A stretch of 56,784 bases of DNA, filler included, from Dugesia japonica (lineage: Eukaryota), in the NCBI GenBank assembly GCA_001938525.1. It is 3 parts of 3 records of this genome, joined end to end, with 100 filler letters (N's around TTAATTAATTAA, not from the genome) between each part and the next. Parts side by side here need not be neighbours in the genome. Positions count along the whole stretch, not along the records: positions 46,755 to 56,784 come from MQRL01181097.1; 2 more parts are not named here. The stretch is one strand, 5' to 3'. Position numbers and translations under genes: made by a program. This document shows positions 46,353-56,784 of this stretch, piece by piece (positions within the stretch are counted from its first letter, which is position 1; each line of letters starts with the position of its first letter). Under the pieces are notes generated by a model that was not told where the DNA came from, searched no databases, and worked only from the letters and a program-made list of their open reading frames with translations.

Positions 46353-47867
46353 GTAAGTTTCTTTCAAATTTTTATAGATGTTGAATTATAACCAATAAAA
46401 CAGCTAATCAAAAACAGAAAAATTAATATTCTTTGTTATACTTTCTTGCGTATCAATAAATTAAAAAGAATCGATCAAAATGTTTTTTTGTTATTATTAG
46501 TAATACAATATTTTTGTTTTATTAAGGTATGATTACCTATTACCACATGTACACAAAGTATGAATTCAGTAAATATATGCTTTAGATAAAATTATATTTA
46601 TCAAATATGTACATTTACTAGTCACGCACATATTAGATTATATATATATATATANNNNNNNNNNNNNNNNNNNNNNNNNNNNNNNNNNNNNNNNNNNNTT
46701 AATTAATTAANNNNNNNNNNNNNNNNNNNNNNNNNNNNNNNNNNNNNNNNNNNNAGCTTAGAAATATAATAATTTTTATTTAAAATTTGGGCGCAATTAC
46801 TTATAATTTATTATATTAACGGTGAGATTGGGGGGGGGGTACTGTACAAGTGCTCAAATATCTTAGTAAGCCAATACATTTAAAATTTATTAAAAAATAT
46901 GGAACTGAGTAATTTTCAATATATAAGCTTGAAATAAAAAGGAAACAATTCTCTAAACAAAGTAAAAAATTTGATATTCAAACTGTTAATGCATTAATAA
47001 AAATTTTTTTAATTATTTACGCAAGTTTGATTTCTAATTATAAAATATTAAAACTATTAAAATTACAATGAAAACTTGAATTTACTTTGATCCATATGTA
47101 CTAGTTNNNNNNNNNNNNNNNNNNNNNNNNNNNNNNNNNNNNNNNNNNNNNNNNNNAAATAATAATTTATTATATTAACGGTGGATGTTATTTAGTTATA
47201 ATAATAAATAAATAATAATATCCACAGATAACTGTCAAATGTTACCTGATAATATATTTCTCAATAATAACTTAATAATATAAGCAAAGTATTTAGAATA
47301 ATTACTAACTGTACAATTAAAAATAATATTCATCATAAATTAATATTTTAAAAATATAAATAATTTAAACAATGGAAATTATAGAAAAATTTAATTTTAA
47401 TATTTCATTATATATATNAAGTTTTTTTTAATGATTTTTATGCAAAGTGTATATTATTCATGTATATAAAGTACTATATAAAAAATTTTAAATGATCATA
47501 AATTTTAGCGAGATTGTTGATACAATGTATAAACTATTTGAGTAACAAAGTTTTTGAAATAAATATTTTCATTGAGTTGATTGAATATAGAGATATAGTG
47601 ACGGCCTGTACCCCCGCTGAAGTAAGAATATTAACTTAATCCTTTTTTAAGTTAAGACTTCTTTATGAACCTCTTTAAGAACCTGTATACTTTTTCTGAT
47701 TATACAATTGGGGAGATTTTCCCTGTGCATTTAGCTGGGAATTTTTTTTGACTTAATCAGATTATGTAATTAGGTTTATTAATTATAAAATAATTAGCAA
47801 TTTTAAAAAAAAATTTTGACTTCAAGTAAAATTAGATAATATTATCTCGCTCTTTTTTGTCCTCTCA

Positions 47868-48360
47868 CTAATTTTCTACTTTTTCATCCGTTTTGCTGTT
47901 AACCTTTCGCATAAGCTGATATCCTAAAATCTTCTGCATATCTATTCCTCCGATCAGATCTGGTGTGACTCTTTCAGCAACTAAGAAAGTAATCTCTTTG
48001 CGAACTTCATCAATTATCAATCCAACTTTAACTTTTCCAACAATTTCAAGAGTACTATTATTTGCACAACGCAATCTTTCATCACTCATTTCTAAATGCA
48101 TTTCTCGTAAATTATTAAAACAACTCAGATTCATCAGGTTAATTCTACCCAATGCATCTAATAAACATTCTAATTCATTTCCATTAAATTGATACCGTAA
48201 CACTTGGTCTGCCTTTTAATTTATGGTACGAAATATTTGTTTTCTGTTCTGATTCAATTGTTCTACTTTTCTTTCATCAGCAAAATTTTCCCTCTTTAAG
48301 AACTTGTATACTTTTTCTGTAACTTTTCCTAAATCATCCCACTCTTGGACCCTTTGAGGA
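47868..48360 (-). mobile_element. Ty3/Gypsy gag-end/protease fragment
   Basis: 'ECLLDALGRINLM..ERLRCANNS..DLIGGID' is paralogous to 2927-3283 and 23142-23444. Confidence 0.85.
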
Positions 48361-48672
48361 TAAATACTAACTACATTTAACTATATTTATATTTTATTTA
48401 ACACGCATTATTTATACATTATTGTCATCAATAATTATTATATTTAAAATCATTAATGTCAATAGATACTAAATTGCAACACATAAAATTAGGATTAGTC
48501 CACCAAAACAATCTTAAAATACCCAACATCTCGAATCTTCCTAAACTGTCTTTCAATTTGTCTGTTTGTAGTTTGATGATAGAGGTTCAAAAAGCAAAGT
48601 TTTTATTTGAAAGCAAACATTTATTTCATCATTTAAACTAAATTCATCGTATTCTTTTTCTTTTCTTCTCAG

Positions 48673-48684
48673 ATTGACAAATGA
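48673..48684 (+). CDS. Possible terminal micro-exon of the orphan gene (IDK*)
   Basis: Strong polypyrimidine acceptor ttttcttttcttctcag|ATTGACAAATGA, with AATAAA ~18 nt downstream. Confidence 0.45.
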   Translation: MDK

Positions 48685-48750
48685 GGTCATCAATTCGATA
48701 AAATAAAGCGTTTATATATGTATTATTTATTTTATAAGAATCGACTTTTA

Positions 48751-48918
48751 AATTGACTCTAAAAGTCAATTCCTGACAAATACAAAGTCGAAATATAGAA
48801 TTGTTATCAAAAACCAAAAATAAAAATTTTGATCGAAGCTTTTATNTTGATGAATTCTGAAAAACGATCAATTTAATTACGCCCAACAATTATTCTCGCA
48901 ATAATTGTAATTGTAAAA
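48751..48918 (+). ncRNA. Hammerhead-ribozyme repeat, copy B (two core/stem mutations), full tail
   Basis: CAATTC-CTGACAA-A-TAC-AAA-GTC-GAA-ATAT-A-GAATTG. Confidence 0.75.
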
Positions 48919-49174
48919 TTTTACATATATTTTTGAAATATTTCAAATATATTTTGAAACTTTTTAAATATATTTCTGCAAAAACCTGTAAACAAAAAAT
49001 CTTTTAAATTACAGTAATATTTTTCGAAATATTTATATTACCGAATTTTTAAAATAGTAAAAACTTATTAAAAAATTATTTAAAAAAATATCGTATGAGT
49101 ATTTTTCTTAGAAAATCGATATTTTTAAATATAAAATTTAATAATAAAACAATTGTGATAGTAAATAAACCTTA

Positions 49175-49330
49175 GGGACCATCCATTAAGGATGTCCCCA
49201 AAAAGTTAGCACTTTTTGACTCCCCATCCTCCTTGTCCCTTTATGTCCATTTCCAAGATCCCTCATATTCCCCACGTGTCCCCTTGTTGGAAACTACCCT
49301 TCCGAGGGGACATCCTTAATGGATGGTAAG
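49175..49330. mobile_element. PIF/Harbinger (Tourist-like) MITE
   Basis: 22-bp perfect inverted repeat ACCATCCATTAAGGATGTCCCC (49178-49199 / 49306-49327); TTA on both sides. Confidence 0.88.
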
Positions 49331-49538
49331 TTATGGCAAATTTTAAAGTTCTCAATTTAACTAATTATTATTATAATTATTATTATTTTTATAATCATTT
49401 CAATTAACACAAAAAGTTGTACCCACACACAGGTAAAATAACTAAAATAAAACATTTAGCTACAAAATATATTGATACTAAATTAGCGAAAGTCGGCAAC
49501 GTCAACATTAATTTTATTTGTTGCCGCCATGTCATCTA

Positions 49539-49949
49539 TCATATGTTATTTTTTGGTCCAAGTTTATCAGTATCTTCTCTCGATTCATGGAATAATGTTT
49601 CGTTTTCAAATATTGTCAAGTTCAACCTTTCNNNNNNNNNNNNNNNNNNNNCAGAGTTCCATTTGGGATTTAAAATATCTTCGAGTGAAAAGGCGCAAAT
49701 AATCATTCGCATATTTCTTGGGATTATTCCAGTAGAATACTTAACTTTTATTAGCCTATTACAAGCTGTATTTGTTAAGTTTAATAATCTTTCTAGGCCC
49801 CACTTCGATAAATCAATCATGTCAACAACTATTCCGTCATATAAGAATTTATTTGGCCCCAACTTTCCAAAGTCCTCCTGTATCGTTACATACAGGGCTT
49901 TTTGAAAATGGGACAATGCGTAATTGGTTTTTCCAATTCCTAAATTCAC
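49539..49949 (-). CDS. SF3 helicase domain resembling CRESS-DNA virus Rep (endogenous viral element or domesticated exon)
   Basis: Walker A 'GIGKTNYALSHF', Walker B 'YDGIVVDM', B' 'VKYSTGIIP', motif C position 'MIICAF', Arg-finger-like 'ERLNL'. Confidence 0.7.
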   Translation of the reverse strand: MNLGIGKTNYALSHFQKALYVTIQEDFGKLGPNKFLYDGIVVDMIDLSKWGLERLLNLTNTACNRLIKVKYSTGIIPRNMRMIICAFSLEDILNPKWNSXXXXXXXERLNLTIFENETLFHESREDTDKLGPKNNI

Positions 49950-50041
49950 TTTTAATAATGTTTACAATAATTAATATTTAATTACATAACAATTGTTAGA
50001 TAAGTAATAATAAATATAATAAGAAATAATTATTTAAAAAT

Positions 50042-50197
50042 CAATTCCTGACGAAGACAAGGTCGAAATATTGAATTGTTATTCAATATCAATAAAAAAA
50101 CCAAAATTTTGATCAAAGCTTTTATATTAAATGAATTCTATTAAACGAACAATGGTTATGTCCAACAATTATTCTAGCAATAATTGCAATTGTAAAA
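50042..50197 (+). ncRNA. Hammerhead-ribozyme repeat, copy C (intact core)
   Basis: CAATTC-CTGACGA-A-GAC-AAG-GTC-GAA-ATAT-T-GAATTG: 6-bp stem I, 3-bp stem II, palindromic stem III. Predicted cleavage after 50072. Confidence 0.85.
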
Positions 50198-50816
50198 CAA
50201 ATAATTATTTATTTAATTAATAGTGTTGGATAATAAATATATACTTAATAAATTTAAATAATCAAAGAAAAACTGCAATTTTTAATAAAAACTCTTAAAC
50301 GACATTTCAATACATATTTTTGTATAACATGTTTTGAGATACATATGTAATCTAAATATACAATATTTAACCATTTTNNNNNNNNNNNNNNNNNNNNNNN
50401 NNNNNNNNTATTAATTGTGCAATCTCTCAAATAAATCAAATACATTGAATAAAAATTCAAAAACCTGATGAACATTCAGTTCTGGATCAATTTATCTGAT
50501 CACCAATCATTCATATATAACTCTCCAAAAAATCTTTAAAGTTTCTGCACAAAATTTTAAAATGATATCTATTAATAACTGATTTACAACTAATATTATA
50601 TCCAACCATATTACTCNCATCACCAAGTTGACGGAAGTTTCTCAAATGTATGTGGCATTACACATTCATTCATATTTATAAACGTCAGAACACATAGTAT
50701 GGGTGTATTTTTGGCTTATTACTATACATCTTTATGATTTTATAAGACTGCGAAACCACTTTAAAATTTAAAGAGTTATTTCTATATAAAGTAACCCACT
50801 CTTAAATTATTTAAAT

Positions 50817-51316
50817 CAGGAGTGGGCAATATTATATATCTTACGGGCCAAAATTAGGTCTATTTTACACTGGCGAGTCACATGGCGACTTTCAATAAAA
50901 TCGGGATTAGATATATTATATATTTGATACCACTTATTTACATAAATATTTTATTGTGCAGATCTAAGAGTTGACATTAAAATTTTATTTAATGTTTTTA
51001 AATAAAGAAATATTATCTGGTTTAACAAAAAATGTGTCAAATTAACTTTCACAAGCATCTATATATACGAACAAATAGACGTAAATTTTTATATAAAAAT
51101 ATTTTTCATGTTCCTGAAGAAGACTATTGTCGAAAATTTGAACTTGTTTTACAAATAAATTTTGTTTTGTTTTGATCGAAGCCTTATCTTATTTTAATGA
51201 AATATTTTTCATTCCTAATATATTATAAAATGTAATCTGTAAAGGAAATAATTGAAAATATTAAGAGATTTCGCGGTAAGAAAGAAATATGTTAAGTGGT
51301 AGGTTGCCGACGTCTG
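50817..51316. mobile_element. hAT (Charlie/Buster-type) MITE carrying a hammerhead repeat insertion
   Basis: TIR CAGGAGTGGGCAA / TTGCCGACGTCTG; TSD atttaaat/gtttatat. Confidence 0.7.
51110..51205 (+). ncRNA. Hammerhead-ribozyme repeat, copy D (intact core, second subfamily)
   Basis: GTTC-CTGAAGA-A-GAC-TATT-GTC-GAA-AATT-T-GAAC. Confidence 0.85.
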
Positions 51317-51397
51317 GTTTATATCCTTCAGAATACGAAACAGTTAATACGTAACTAAACTTCAATATTTTATCTGGATCTTTGATAATACTTTTAT

Positions 51398-51486
51398 ATT
51401 TCATTAAATTAAAGAAAAAGCTTCGATCAAAATAAAATTTATTCATAAAGAAATTCAAATTTTCGACACTTGTCTTCTTCAGAAAA
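51398..51486 (-). ncRNA. Hammerhead-ribozyme repeat, copy E (intact core, weak stem I)
   Basis: Minus strand TTT-CTGAAGA-A-GAC-AAGT-GTC-GAA-AATT-T-GAA followed by the tail ttttgatcgaagcttt. Confidence 0.8.
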
Positions 51487-52049
51487 GATAACTTTCTGAT
51501 GGATTCAAATTGACGATCGATCATTGCTACAAGTTCTTAAACTTTTATCGAGATTTTATTGGTCTACTAAATTATAATTTTTTTTAAAATTAAGTCTGAA
51601 AAATTATTTTTAATTAAATTTGATTAAAAATTTTCCTAAATGTTTTTTGTAAAAATTTTTTTAATAAATTAAAGTATATAATATTAAGATGTATTTTATT
51701 AATATTAAAATTTTAATCTAATTTTTTTTAGTTATTTTAATATTAAGAATCTTTGTAATAGTGTTTATTTATTTTTAACTTTTAATTATTGAAAGGTTTT
51801 TTAAATTATTGTAATTAGTGAAAATTTTTAATTATTGTAATTGTTAAAAATCACATTAAACTCAGGTTTCTCCTCTTTAATTAATATTTGTTCATGTTTT
51901 TTCTGTGAAGTGTAGAAATGTAGCCTGTTCCTAATGTTTTTCAAGTAATATGATGATTTTCTGGTAAAACATTATGTTTGTTTTGAAAGTGTTTGAAGAC
52001 TTAACTTTATTTATGTTTGAGATGTTCTTTAATTTTTGTAGGGATGGTT

Positions 52050-55000
52050 CTACATGTTTTTCCTATATATGTATCCTTACATAAGGTGCATGTTATTTTG
52101 TAAGTGATATTTTTTATTGCATATATTTCTACCATCACATATGCATTTCGGACCACAAAAATTCTGCCTTGGTTTCTGTAATTGGATACCCAAAGGTGCT
52201 TGTATTTTAAATATCAAATTTTATTTTACAAAAATCTTTTTAGATTCTTTTAAATGCAAGAATCCATGAAAAGTACAAAGATATATTTTCATATCACAAA
52301 CATTTACACGTGCCAAGGCACTACTTCCCCTTTCGACTACAGCGTCTCAGGGTACTCTCACTAATATGATACATATAAACAAAAGATGATTTATGATATG
52401 TCATCCTCATTTCCTTTGCAATATCCTTTGATGGAATCAAAGTCGATTGTCTAATGATATGTTGAAATAATAGAATCCGTGCGGATATCGTCGGGTATTT
52501 GAGATCATATGAAATTCCAATTAATCGATATTTCTTCGTCAATGGGCTTTACATGAGTAAATACCATTCAGATTTTCTTCCATTAGGCATTTATTGACCA
52601 TCATTAGTTCTGAATAACTGGGAGCAAAATCGACTAGACTATGAGTGTTGTGAGACGCCCATGTAAGATTGCTCCATCTAATGTTAGAAATCATCATTTT
52701 CTATTTAAGCTTGCTGATCTTCTCTTGAGAGATTTTCAATTTCGACTTGATATTGTTGTTTTCCAATAACGAAGAAAAACGAGAATAAGGTGTCGAGGAG
52801 AACCTTCCAATCTGGAATAGCTGCTTGTATTTCGTTATTGAGGCTCTGATATTTTGAATTGTTAGTAATATGTGCTTCCTCCATGTTATCGTGATTATCG
52901 TAAAGTGTTTTGACATCAAGAAGCCACATTTGTCAACTCTCTTTAATTTCTATTTGAAGATCAACGCGCATCATCGAGTAAACGAAAGCACATTTACGAT
53001 CATTTGATAATGCTGAGATTTGGATTTGATTCCTGCAGTGTGGAGTAGAGAGAATTGAGAATAGCATTATGTCTGTTTACGAGGTAATACGAGTTTCAGG
53101 GACAAGGGCAGGGAACGTGATATTGCGACTTTATTTCATAATAGAATTTTCTACATTTCTCCTTATTCTTTTGGTACTGAATTCAACCGTTGACTGGCAA
53201 TGTGTTTGTCCTGGCTAAGATGAATGATGTACCAATCTTGAATAATAATACTTCCATTATGTTTGAAAGTTTGTCTAAGGCCAATGAAGTAGCTAAGATG
53301 CCAGCACGACAATGCTCACTCCATTTCATGAATTGAGAGAGCTGGTAAAGTCTGTGATAGGAGAATAGAGATAAGCAGTTGATGCATTTAGAGGCAGACC
53401 GCAGATCCTTTTGACTCTTTTACTAATTTTGAAGTCAAGGCTTTGCTGAAAACAGTGTTTTCAACCTTATGGTGACCATAGTCTTCTAGTACACGATTAG
53501 GTATGTTGTAGTTGCGAAACACAAATATGAGCCTCGAGTGTATGAATATTTTGTAAGCTTCAAACTTTCTTCAAACCGCTCCAATTAGTCCAGAAATTAA
53601 CTGTATTTACCATGCTTTGGAGATTGTCGAGGTTATCCGCTATCAAGGCAATATCATCAGCGTAGGCTACACATTCTAAGCGATAGTTACCGATTTGAGC
53701 GCCAGCATTTTTCACCAGTGCGCATTCTGTAAGAATTGGATCAAGATCAACATTAAAGACAAGCATTGATAGAGGGCAACCTTGAAGGACTCCTCTATGG
53801 ACCGATATGCACAAGGTTGTAATATTTGATCAGATATAATAGGATAAACAACCTTCATCGATGATATTAATGAGATTTGTAGCGGGACACTCCATACCCA
53901 CAAGTCTTAAGATTCATGTTATGTGATGAATTTGTATACTTCCGAAAGCGTCCGAAATGTCNAAGTAGGCGATGTGTAAGTTTTTACCTGGACCGTATTC
54001 TTGAAGAATAGACATGAGAATGTTGTTATGCTCTGTACAGCCTTCTGATTTATCGGTTCCTTTTTGAAGAGGAAACGAAAGTTGATTTTATCTATCCATT
54101 TTTTAATTTGACCAGCTAGGCATGCAGTAAAGATCTTATACATGCATTCCAGCAGAGCCATAGGACGCCAAGACCCTATTTGATTGTATTTTCCTTCTTT
54201 GTCAGGTTTTGGAATCATGAGAGTTAAATATGATTTCCAGTGCTTTTAAATTTTGCCTGATCTAATGATCTTGTTGAATAGAAGGCAGATAAATTGAGAT
54301 TGTGGGTCACAATACTTGATCTATATGTAAGTGATGTTACTGATTCCTGGACTGCTGTTCGACATGGATTAGATGACACGAATAAGGTCGGTTTGTTAAA
54401 TTTCTTGAAATTTGAAACTAAGACCACGACGAATGTGTGGCAAAATATCCCATTGAGTGGATGAAGGATCAGAAGATTTGAGTTTGAAAGTACATGTTCA
54501 AAAACAGATTTTGGACACTGAATTTTTCACGAAGTGAGAAATCCATAGTGGCCCCCTGATGTTTAAAAGGATTGGTGTTGTTGAATCTTTTAGGTTTTGT
54601 ACTTCTAGTTTTCCAAATATATCCGGTTAGAACATTCTCGATAATTTCAGGTTTCAGAATTGTAAGTTCAGAAAATAGGAGATTGATGTTACTGAGTCTT
54701 TGATGTAGTAGTGAGACTTTTTATTTGAGCTGGATGGACTGATATCGATAACAATTTTAGATGGAAGATCCATAAGAGATTAATTTATTTCTGATGGCAT
54801 TGATTTAGATTTTCAAAGGAGTTTGATTGTGGATAATCTTTTCAATAATTCCACACGTGATGAGTCCAATGTTAACTTGATTTGATGAGACATCGTGAGG
54901 TGTAAAATTTAGAACAAATCGAGCCTCTAAATCTTAATCATTTCTGAACGAGTTCATATTTTTGTTAAAAAGTTTGCCAACAGTCATTGAGGATTCATCA

Positions 55001-56784
55001 AGAATATTCGATGAAGTATCAATGAGAAAGGATTTTCCTATGTTTTGATTAAAGAAGATATTCCAACTATCGTTGACTAACTTGAATGGGAAAATTACAA
55101 GATCTTTGCGTATGAATTGGTTGAAGCCAATGTTTCTTTTAATAAATTATTCATTCCCTTCAGCAAGTTTAGTGAGGTCTCCACATTGCGTAACAGGTAC
55201 TTTGATTGATTTCATAATTTCAGTGAGGTATTTTATAAGATGATTTTCATTAAAATTCATGATTGATTTTGACGCTTTCAATAAAGAATTATCTGGAAAA
55301 TATCATCCACCTTCATCATCATATTTGTTTTCCTTTTCTTTTTTTCCTTTGTATTCTGAAACACCCAGGAACGGATCTCTTCAATGTTGATGTTCTTCGG
55401 AGTTATGCCATTTGACATCTTGAGAATGTACCAACAAACTATTCGTCCACAATCATTTCCATTCGTTTGTTTNTGGTGTTCAATTGATTTTTCCTGAAAG
55501 ACGAATTTTGTTTTCAGTTCCCTCAAGGTTTCAGATATTTCTTTCGCTAATTTTATTAATTCTTTGTCGGGACTACGTCTATTTAATGGATACAAGATCA
55601 TAGATTTTTTCTTGTATGCAAAGAAAAGCACCCAGTATTGGTTGTTGACATGTATAGGTGTGAAGATTCTAGAAATTTTACTAAAATCAAAGTTATTCAA
55701 TGCTTCACTAATTGTGGATGTTTCTCTTTATGCTATCGTAAAAACGAAATTTAGTATCAACGCACACGTAATGTTGGAAATGTGATTTTCAACAAATTCT
55801 TCAATCTGTGGATCACTGAACAAGAATGTATTTTTGTATGGTGGATTTTTCACAATTAAGCTATATGGAGACTTGAGCTTAATTGTGGAGCCATATCATC
55901 AAATTTCCGGTTTGTTTGACTTTGCATTTGGCGTCGAATTGGCCAGAGCAGATTTCCCTTTCTTTTTCTGTCTAGATCTTCCACCTATAACACTTAGATC
56001 TTTTATTGGTTCATGCTCAGAAGCATCAGTTGATGCATTAAGAGTTTCCATGGTTTGATATATCATTAGGATATCTGGATTTGATAATGTAACGGAGGAG
56101 ACATCAGCTTTGTTGTAGATAACCAGATCTAATGCGTATTTCTGATCTCCTTTCTTGATTGTAGGATAGAGAACTTTCAAAAGTNNNNNNNNNNNNNNNN
56201 NNNNNNTGTTTACTCTTGAGAATTCTCTTAGTTCTTTGAGATTTTCGTGAGGGAGATTTTTCATTCTGGTTGGTCTTTCAAGTTTGTTCATGAATTTGAG
56301 ATAATCAAGTGTAATTTATCTTGAGTTCTCATGATTAACAGATATAAGATCATCATACTTTTTGATAAAGTCAAGATTTTTCTTTTCGATAATTTTTTCT
56401 AGAAATGGGTTTTCGACTCGATAATTGATTTTTATTCATTATTTTTGCCAATGATTCCTTTGGAATAGTTTTGTTGTCAACTGCCTTTTGTGAGTATTTC
56501 TGTCACCCTTGGTACTCTGTGTGGCTGGCAGCACCAGATATTTTATCTTGTGTAACCACATTATCATCATCCTTCGAGAGTGCAGTTATCGCTAGTTGAA
56601 CACAAGCTATTCCATTCATGCCGAGATCAGAAGAAACTTCAAAGATATGAGCAGGGACCATTTCTGATATTTTATCAATATCGCAGCTATTATTAGCGAG
56701 TGTCTTCAGGTCTTTAGAAATGGAATTGTAAATATTACTCTGTTTTCCTGCTATTTTGAGAGCACCTGTTTCAAGATTCCATAA
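52050..56784 (-). mobile_element. Decayed NeSL-clade (R2-superfamily) non-LTR retrotransposon: Ulp1/C48 protease + RT + probable RLE region
   Basis: Protease 'PIHVNNQYWVLF...KQTNGNDCG' (55278-55700). RT 'IPKPDK..WRPMALLECMYKIFT', 'GVLQGCPLSMLVFN', 'AYADDIALI' (53560-54218). Degenerate Cys knuckle near 52300-52345. Boundaries are approximate. Confidence 0.85.

What the first reader, a model, noticed from the sequence alone, without database searches (positions are those of the whole stretch)
49539..49949. CRESS-DNA-virus-like Rep helicase domain, possibly spliced and domesticated
Seen: an open 136-aa frame with SF3 motifs in the spacing typical of gemini/genomo/redondo-like Reps (GxGKT..AL.HF, DGIV.D, VKY...IP). 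No HUH nuclease half or capsid gene is nearby. Similarity starts right after a tttag (49928-49932) inside Walker A, preceded by AT-rich intron-like DNA, and the frame has no stops, unlike almost every TE relic here. Walker B (VVDM) and motif C (no Asn) look altered. Inference: an endogenous ssDNA viral element, perhaps exonised. It would also record a host for that virus group.
Basis: partly seen in the sequence, partly recalled or inferred. Interest (0 to 1): 0.75.

Follow-up and report, generated by a model that had tools for sequence, protein, structure and literature searches.

The report
Lone helicase exon of viral Rep
An AT-rich, transposon-littered eukaryotic contig carries the last exon (helicase half only) of a replication gene from a small circular-DNA virus-like element, still open but lacking two catalytic residues and its front half: an ordinary viral fossil from a little-known lineage.

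Summary
On the minus strand, 49542-49939 is a stop-free frame that is truly homologous to the SF3 helicase domain of CRESS-type Rep proteins. There were 147 hits in 1.84 billion proteins, the best at E 2.8e-20. The hits carry Viral_Rep or Gemini_AL1 front halves. The best solved-structure match to a predicted model of the piece is the PCV2 Rep ATPase domain, though weak (E about 0.1). The best viral fold match, and the only named relative, is the Rep of the planarian virus-like element (TM 0.90).

Similarity begins exactly at an AG acceptor inside Walker A. The tttag lies at 49940-49944, not 49928-49932. One close relative has a short GT..AG intron at the same codon and phase, so the intron probably came with the element and is not a sign of host exonisation.

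The 20-N gap is compatible with one continuous frame: seven residues are missing and the invariant arginine sits in place. No endonuclease half exists anywhere in the 10-kb piece. The second Walker B acid (D/E in 78 of 79 relatives) is Met, and the motif C Asn (74 of 79) is Phe.

Best reading: a 5'-truncated endogenous fragment that is dead as an ATPase and sits between copies of an interspersed repeat. Domestication is neither shown nor excluded. The host is unknown.

The parts
49542..49939 (-). Terminal exon-like coding block: SF3 helicase domain of a CRESS-type Rep, running from inside Walker A to the natural C-terminus. It includes the 20-N assembly gap.
   Evidence: phmmer best E 2.8e-20. 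Family profile positions 197-319, E 8e-43, with X at the gap. AF2 model pLDDT 93.6. Best PDB fold match is the PCV2 Rep ATPase domain 8xms. BFVD top hit is the planarian element Rep, TMq 0.90.
49940..49944 (-). tttag: putative 3' splice site, phase 1. The AG is at 49941-49940. Homology begins at the codon that spans it.
   Evidence: Sequence. Profile alignment starts there. Relative L003 has a GT..AG intron at the same codon and phase, and L001 has one two codons downstream.
49539..49541 (-). Stop codon of the frame, followed at once by a second in-frame stop codon. It lies close to where the relatives end.
   Evidence: P0003 aligns to its own last residue.
49632..49651 (.). Assembly gap (20 N) inside the exon. 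It is compatible with 7 missing codons in the same frame.
50035..50197 (+). Copy of interspersed repeat R, 95 nt upstream (in gene sense) of the acceptor. It marks the outer limit of what can belong to the viral fragment on that side.
   Evidence: About 85% identical to 48760-48918.
48760..48918 (+). Second copy of repeat R in the same orientation, 620 nt beyond the stop codon.
49178..49327 (.). 150-nt element with perfect 22-bp terminal inverted repeats, 47% GC, lying between the stop codon and repeat R. It looks like a separate MITE-type insertion.
   Evidence: DNA fold z = -4.6.
51111..51485 (.). MITE-like unit whose inverted arms are the first ~80 nt of repeat R.
   Evidence: I1, I5.
53560..54218 (-). 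Neighbour: reverse-transcriptase relic in several pieces (a retroelement, not part of the Rep fragment).
   Evidence: RVT_1 at E 6.4e-10 and 9.4e-4.
55278..55700 (-). Neighbour: Ulp1/C48 peptidase-like ORF, scoring just under the Pfam cut-off.
   Evidence: Peptidase_C48 E 6.9e-4, 19.9 bits against a cut-off of 20.7. No homologues found at its length.

Best explanation
This is an endogenous fragment of a small Rep-encoding DNA element. The element belongs to the little-sampled CRESS-like lineage whose only named member is the Rep of the planarian extrachromosomal virus-like element. The fragment lies in the chromosome of an unidentified AT-rich, TE-rich eukaryote.

Only the last exon of the Rep gene is present: the SF3 helicase domain from the middle of Walker A to the stop codon. 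Its own intron acceptor is still attached. That points to unspliced DNA as the source, with the 5' break inside or upstream of the intron (inference).

As it stands it cannot act as a replication protein.
- It has no HUH endonuclease half.
- The first Walker A glycine is not encoded in this exon.
- The second Walker B acid is Met and the motif C sensor Asn is Phe, so ATP hydrolysis should be lost. This follows from what is known of SF3/AAA+ helicases and was not tested here.
- There is no in-frame ATG before residue 44.

The frame is still open and the protein is no more diverged than its nearest relatives. The insertion is therefore either fairly young or under some constraint. I take 'young or lucky fossil' as the more likely of the two.
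For: - Homology: 147 hits, best E 2.8e-20 at 55% identity.
- Of 79 aligned hits, 25 carry Viral_Rep, 7 Gemini_AL1_M and 2 Gemini_AL1.
- The family profile hits PCV2 Rep 7lar at E 1e-19.
- Fold: the top five PDB matches are the PCV2 Rep ATPase domain (probability 0.77-0.89). The BFVD top hit is the planarian element Rep at E 1.3e-9, TMq 0.90, rmsd 1.3 A, followed by Reps of uncultured CRESS viruses.
- P0003 is named Rep of the planarian virus-like element.
- The intron is shared with L003 (same codon and phase) and nearly with L001. Their upstream exons lie within about 50-60 nt.
- No N-terminal half in any frame of the piece: best E 0.88 for the profile, and nothing significant from 149 single queries.
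- Catalytic columns are lost. The Arg finger is kept.
- The chromosomal context is full of repeats: an RT relic, a Ulp1-like ORF and MITE-like repeats.
- Other members of the same subgroup are broken or chimeric copies on AT-rich contigs. L004 is broken and P0004 is fused to a PIF1 piece. Endogenisation of this lineage therefore recurs.
Against: - The frame is open over 133 lettered codons in DNA where 7-8% of codons are stops.
- Relative-rate tests show no excess change on the window's branch: chi-square below 3.84 in all 16 comparisons.
- 10 of the 12 nearly invariant columns that can be read are kept.
- These three points would also fit a gene kept by selection for a non-catalytic role.
- The upstream exons could lie beyond the piece's edge or in the gap at 50378-50408.
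- The host is unknown, and no copy number or expression data are at hand.
Confidence: 0.62

Rival explanations
1. Exapted exon. The helicase-domain exon is spliced to host or element exons lying beyond 56784, or across a TE-swollen intron. It would yield an ATPase-dead Rep-derived protein kept for binding or oligomerisation, or as a dominant-negative guard against related elements.
For: Open frame. No rate acceleration. A usable AG acceptor in the right phase. The fold-determining and Arg-finger columns are kept while only catalytic ones are changed.
Against: No upstream exon, start codon or coding-looking ORF within 6.8 kb upstream. The acceptor is inherited from the element's own intron, so it says nothing about host use. 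There are no expression data.
Confidence: 0.17
2. The fragment is a passenger inside a host transposable element. A piece of Rep DNA was caught between two copies of repeat R and has been spread or kept as part of that element.
For: Two R copies in direct orientation bracket the exon, 1,275-1,280 bp apart. R's first ~80 nt also form the arms of a MITE 1 kb away. One relative is fused to a Helitron-type PIF1 piece.
Against: Only one such unit can be seen. No target-site duplication or second copy is available. R copies may simply be frequent in this genome.
Confidence: 0.13
3. Assembly artefact. A complete Rep gene, or an episomal element, is present in the organism, and the front half is missing here only because of gaps or a chimeric join.
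For: Nine runs of N in 10 kb, one inside the exon and one 430 nt upstream of it. The named relative is reported as extrachromosomal (PMC3198968).
Against: Relatives keep the preceding exon within about 50-60 nt of the acceptor. Here 95 nt of read sequence upstream show none, and then a host repeat begins. The gap at 50378-50408 lies beyond that repeat.
Confidence: 0.06
4. A cellular or non-CRESS P-loop NTPase that only resembles Rep.
For: Pfam, NCBIfam and PDB sequence searches with the piece alone return nothing, even at E 10.
Against: Every significant relative is Rep-like. Hits with a recognisable front half carry Rep endonuclease domains. Fold searches rank Rep first.
Confidence: 0.02

Closest known systems
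Rep of the planarian (Girardia tigrina) asexual strain-specific / extrachromosomal virus-like element (P0003; UniProt Q910M2)
   Same: It is the only named relative. It shows 42-44% identity over the helicase domain. It is the best viral fold match, with TMq 0.90 and rmsd 1.3 A. It has the same GIGKT..ALSHF, DG..DD, VxYG and RR landmarks, and its C-terminus falls about 16 codons before the window's stop.
   Different: That Rep is a full 272-aa protein with an N-terminal half, an intact Walker B and an intact motif C. The window has only the helicase exon, with M and F at those two catalytic columns. The element was reported as not integrated (PMC3198968). No NS1-like second helicase or long inverted repeats of that element were seen here.
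Endogenous CRESS/circovirus-like Rep fragments in eukaryotic genomes (Liu et al. 2011, PMC3198968; Dennis et al. 2018, PMC6069186; Kinsella et al. 2020, PMC7493932)
   Same: A Rep-derived fragment embedded in host repeats, without a capsid gene, that could in principle serve as a host record.
   Different: It is not from Circoviridae, gemini- or genomoviruses or the Entamoeba/Giardia-linked families, as far as names go. It is helicase-only and starts at an intron boundary.
PCV2 Rep ATPase domain (PDB 8xms, 7lar)
   Same: Best solved-structure match to the model. It shares the SF3 core order of strands and helices.
   Different: Only 14-16% identity, TMq 0.52-0.63 and E about 0.1 over the top five chains. 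PCV2 Rep is catalytically complete and unspliced.
Spliced Rep genes of mastre-, becurto-, capula- and grabloviruses and genomoviruses (bioRxiv 10.1101/687855)
   Same: Rep is interrupted by a short spliceosomal intron between the nuclease part and the helicase core.
   Different: Here, and in relative L003, the intron sits inside the Walker A codons. Two other close relatives (L002, L004) lack it. Only 9 of 79 related proteins show geminivirus-type Pfam domains, so common descent of the intron is not shown.

Membership tests
CRESS-type Rep (HUH endonuclease + SF3 helicase) | Significant sequence homology of the helicase part to Reps that carry a Rep endonuclease domain | tested here: met
   best E 2.8e-20. 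Among 79 hits, Viral_Rep in 25, Gemini_AL1_M in 7 and Gemini_AL1 in 2.
CRESS-type Rep (HUH endonuclease + SF3 helicase) | SF3 fold of the ATPase core | tested here: met
   Model pLDDT 93.6. PDB top five are the PCV2 Rep ATPase domain. BFVD has 16 Rep hits at E<=1e-3.
CRESS-type Rep (HUH endonuclease + SF3 helicase) | Walker A GxxxxGK[ST] | tested here: inconclusive
   G-I-G-K-T is present. The first Gly (G in 76 of 76 relatives) would be encoded upstream of the acceptor and is not in the piece.
CRESS-type Rep (HUH endonuclease + SF3 helicase) | Walker B with two acidic residues | tested here: not met
   First Asp kept (79 of 79). Second position is D 72, E 6, N 1 in relatives and Met in the window.
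CRESS-type Rep (HUH endonuclease + SF3 helicase) | Motif C sensor Asn | tested here: not met
   N in 74 of 79 relatives, Phe in the window.
CRESS-type Rep (HUH endonuclease + SF3 helicase) | Arginine finger | tested here: met
   R in 75 of 77 relatives. The window has R at that column, as the second residue after the gap. This depends on the gap being 7 codons.
CRESS-type Rep (HUH endonuclease + SF3 helicase) | N-terminal HUH endonuclease domain in the same gene | tested here: not met
   No match to profile positions 1-196 in any frame of 46755-56784.
Free CRESS-DNA virus genome | Small circular genome with a capsid gene and an origin stem-loop next to rep | tested here: not met
   The exon lies on a 10-kb piece with an RT relic, a Ulp1-like ORF and MITE-like repeats. 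No neighbouring ORF has a capsid-type Pfam hit. An origin motif was not searched, because a short AT-rich motif would match by chance in 25% GC DNA.
Endogenous viral element | Virus-derived sequence joined to host or repeat DNA on one molecule | tested here: met
   This is subject to the assembly being right.
Domesticated (exapted) viral gene | Complete transcription unit: start codon, upstream exon, splicing, expression | not testable with these tools
   No transcript data. No upstream exon or ATG was found in the piece.
Domesticated (exapted) viral gene | Purifying selection on the host branch, or orthologues in sister species | tested here: inconclusive
   Open frame and no rate acceleration. 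However, dS against relatives is saturated, and no orthologues or paralogues are available.
Planarian virus-like element (PEVE/PIVE type) | Rep plus a second NS1/E1-like helicase ORF, with unique regions flanked by long inverted repeats | tested here: not met
   Only Rep homology was found. No Parvo_NS1-type hit among ORFs of 50 aa or more. The element's genome was not fetched, so its non-coding parts were not compared.
Replitron / Helitron transposase | Replitron: Rep without a helicase. Helitron: Y2 Rep plus an SF1B (PIF1-like) helicase | tested here: not met
   The window's domain is SF3, with no PIF1 hit. Replitrons lack a helicase (PMC10288648).

The most novel reading that the evidence does not exclude
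The exon is a living, catalytically dead remnant of Rep that the host splices onto upstream exons lying beyond this piece, and that is kept as a decoy or dominant-negative partner against related elements. In addition, the Walker-A intron would mark a Rep lineage (the planarian element plus unnamed AT-rich contigs) that lives in animal or protist nuclei and moves in and out of chromosomes.
Probability: 0.12. Interest if true: 0.6.

Novelty: new member of a known kind. Interest (0 to 1): 0.3.

Why it matters
Rep-derived fossils are among the few ways to tie the huge mass of host-less CRESS-like sequences to real hosts. This fossil belongs to a lineage with one named member, the planarian element. 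Otherwise that lineage has only unnamed short contigs, several of them broken or chimeric. Once the organism is known, the fragment would add a host record and a minimum age for that lineage.

The shared intron inside Walker A is a small but useful marker for nuclear expression in that lineage. As a gene, the fragment itself is most probably inert.

Tried and rejected
- Searches with the piece alone gave nothing usable. Pfam, NCBIfam and the PDB sequence search returned no hit, and PHROGs returned only noise at E 0.26. The word-indexed protein search found nothing at 55-173 aa. Only the exhaustive phmmer run found relatives.\n- A possible second, degraded helicase copy just downstream of the stop. 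This was suggested by a short echo of the D.GKLGP stretch, but E was 0.3 and there is no DNA similarity to the first copy (score below shuffles). Rejected as chance.\n- A patch like the planarian Rep's N-terminal part at 56277-56435 (-), with tblastn E 0.06 among 149 queries. It runs through a stop. Its pieces compared apart give only an 11-residue match at E 0.018 and one at E 17, and the profile gives nothing. Rejected.\n- Host identification failed. There were no tRNA or Rfam hits. The Ulp1-like ORF has no homologues. The sample accessions of the relatives appear in no held paper. Names were available for only one of 20 clusters, and the profile search for named full-length Reps gave 7 unnamed hits.\n- dN/dS against L001-L003: dS is saturated or undefined and dN is 0.34-0.47. 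This is not informative for the host branch.\n- The bacterial promoter/terminator scan is irrelevant for a eukaryote.\n- Replitron idea dropped, because Replitrons have no helicase.\n- The Rebrikov 2002 paper on the planarian element is not held.

Full report
WHAT IS THERE

On the minus strand, 49949 to 49539 is a stop-free frame of 136 codons, seven of which are X from the 20-N gap at 49632-49651. The piece as a whole is 19-39% GC, and one codon in 13.5 is a stop across its six frames. A run of 133 lettered codons is therefore expected about 0.1 times in the piece. I searched the two sides of the gap apart throughout. The upstream side is window:49653-49949:- (99 aa) and the downstream side is window:49542-49631:- (30 aa).

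IS IT A REP HELICASE?

The 99-aa piece alone finds nothing usable in Pfam, NCBIfam, PHROGs or PDB sequences, even at E 10, and nothing in the word-indexed protein search.

- Exhaustive phmmer against 1.84 billion representatives finds 147 proteins at E<=1e-3. Nine are at E<=1e-10 and the best is 2.8e-20 at 55% identity.
- Most hits are about 300 aa long with the match at residues about 180-280, which is the place of the helicase in a Rep.
- Of 79 aligned hits, 25 carry Viral_Rep, 7 Gemini_AL1_M and 2 Gemini_AL1.
- The family profile finds PCV2 Rep (7lar) at E 1e-19, along with the solved Rep nuclease domains.
- An AlphaFold model of the 99 aa, built with that alignment, has pLDDT 93.6.
- Its five best PDB matches are chains of the PCV2 Rep ATPase domain 8xms. 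These are weak by E-value (about 0.1), with probability 0.77-0.89.
[quoted passage not shown] Reps of uncultured CRESS viruses follow.
- The same planarian protein is sequence hit P0003, the only one of 20 clusters I looked up that has a name.

THE GAP

- With 20 N the two sides are nominally in one frame: one base plus 20 N makes 7 codons.
- After the gap, only that frame stays open (30 codons). The other two frames stop after 2 and 7 codons.
- The family profile places the upstream piece up to position 289-290 and the downstream piece from about position 298. P0001, P0005 and P0139 each imply exactly 7 missing residues.
- The nearly invariant arginine (R in 75 of 77 relatives) is the second residue after the gap.
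- The downstream piece alone scores only about 7 bits, within the range of shuffles.

Continuity in frame is well supported but rests on position rather than on strong similarity.

WHERE THE SIMILARITY STARTS

The profile alignment begins at the Gly codon of G-I-G-K-T. The first base of that codon is the G of an AG preceded by ttt (tttag, 49944-49940 on the minus strand). Upstream lies AT-rich sequence with no similarity to any Rep.

I looked up the contigs of the closest relatives. They are short, unnamed and AT-rich (28-37% GC).

- L003 has a GT..AG intron of about 60 nt at the same codon and in the same phase.
- L001 has one of about 50 nt two codons further on.
- In both, the preceding exon lies directly upstream.
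- L002 and L004 read through Walker A without an intron.

Introns in Rep are known from several geminivirus genera and from genomoviruses (bioRxiv 10.1101/687855). The acceptor in the window is therefore best read as the element's own, not as a mark of host exonisation.

WHAT IS MISSING OR ALTERED

- No frame of 46755-56784 matches the N-terminal 196 profile positions. The best E was 0.88, and 149 single-protein queries gave nothing significant.
- A weak patch at 56277-56435 resembling the planarian Rep fell apart when its pieces were compared separately.
- The first Walker A glycine (G in 76 of 76 relatives) would be encoded before the acceptor.
- The second Walker B acid is D in 72, E in 6 and N in 1 of 79 relatives. 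The window has Met.
- The motif C Asn is present in 74 of 79 relatives. The window has Phe.
- GKT, the first Walker B Asp, the Arg finger and the other nearly invariant columns are kept: 10 of the 12 that can be read.
- The first in-frame ATG is that Met at residue 44.

From what is known of SF3/AAA+ helicases, such a protein should bind but not hydrolyse ATP. That is inference and was not tested.

AGE AND CONSTRAINT

- Relative-rate tests against four close relatives and four outgroups show no excess change on the window's branch (chi-square below 3.84 in all 16 comparisons).
- Against a helicase profile built without the window and its four nearest relatives, the window scores 99 bits. That lies inside the range of those relatives (78-107) and below typical family members (median 136-146).
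- dS against L001-L003 is saturated.

These data fit either a fairly recent insertion or some constraint, and they cannot separate the two.

SURROUNDINGS

- The exon lies between two copies, in the same orientation, of a ~160-bp repeat R: 48760-48918 and 50035-50197, about 85% identical and 1,275-1,280 bp apart.
- The first ~80 nt of R also form the inverted arms of a MITE-like unit at 51111-51485.
- A 150-nt element with perfect 22-bp terminal inverted repeats sits at 49178-49327.
- Further upstream, in gene sense, are a reverse-transcriptase relic in pieces (53560-54218) and a Ulp1-like ORF (55278-55700).
- No capsid-like or NS1-like ORF was recognised.
- There are no tRNA or Rfam hits.

This is eukaryotic, TE-rich chromosomal DNA. 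The organism could not be named. It is not human-like.

READING

The most likely reading (0.62) is a 5'-truncated endogenous fragment of a Rep gene from the lineage of the planarian element. It would have been taken up as unspliced DNA, with the break in or before the intron, and it is now inert as a helicase.

The rivals are:
- an exapted exon whose partners lie outside the piece (0.17);
- a passenger inside a host transposon bounded by R (0.13), which overlaps with the main reading;
- an assembly artefact hiding a complete gene (0.06);
- a non-Rep NTPase (0.02).

Other members of the same subgroup are also damaged or chimeric. L004 is a broken copy, with more than one frame change and stops. 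P0004 is fused to a PIF1-type piece. This lineage has therefore entered AT-rich genomes more than once.

STEPS LEFT OUT, AND SLIPS

- I did not scan viral contigs or metagenome contigs with the Rep. I also did not fetch the planarian element's genome or the contigs of P0003/P0148. I could not tell whether those roads would bring in a virus of animals.
- I did look up five unnamed short contigs of the closest protein hits. One of them returned no DNA. Nothing names their origin. I used them only for bounds, intron position, composition and scores.
The only read-through was the window's own frame, with X at the assembly gap.

Noticed in passing
window 49178-49327: 150-nt element, 47% GC in 25% GC surroundings, with perfect 22-bp terminal inverted repeats and a 106-nt interior. 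DNA fold z = -4.6. It occurs once in the piece and looks like a young MITE.
   Followed up: partly
window 48760-48918, 50035-50197, 51111-51485: Interspersed repeat R: two direct copies bracket the Rep exon. The first ~80 nt of R also form the inverted arms of a 375-bp MITE-like unit.
   Followed up: partly
window 49408-49902 (+): The antisense frame over the Rep exon is the longest stop-free run of the whole piece (165 codons including X). No homology was sought for it.
   Followed up: no
window 53560-54218 (-) and 55278-55700 (-): A reverse-transcriptase relic split into several ORFs, and a 140-aa Ulp1/C48 peptidase-like ORF just below the Pfam cut-off. The latter has no homologue of similar length among 5.8 billion proteins.
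   Followed up: partly
L001 (ENA ERZ27292660), L003 (Logan SRR27560321), L002 (JGI 3300031718), L004 (Logan SRR21676451): The closest relatives sit on short AT-rich contigs (28-37% GC). Two have a short GT..AG intron inside Walker A and two do not. One (L004) is a broken copy, and one protein (P0004) is fused to a PIF1-type piece. This suggests a Rep lineage that repeatedly ends up in AT-rich eukaryotic genomes.
   Followed up: partly
window 49545-49590 (-): The tail of the frame after the gap has a short echo of the D.GKLGP stretch found in the first piece. E is about 0.3 and there is no DNA similarity, so it is probably chance.
   Followed up: yes
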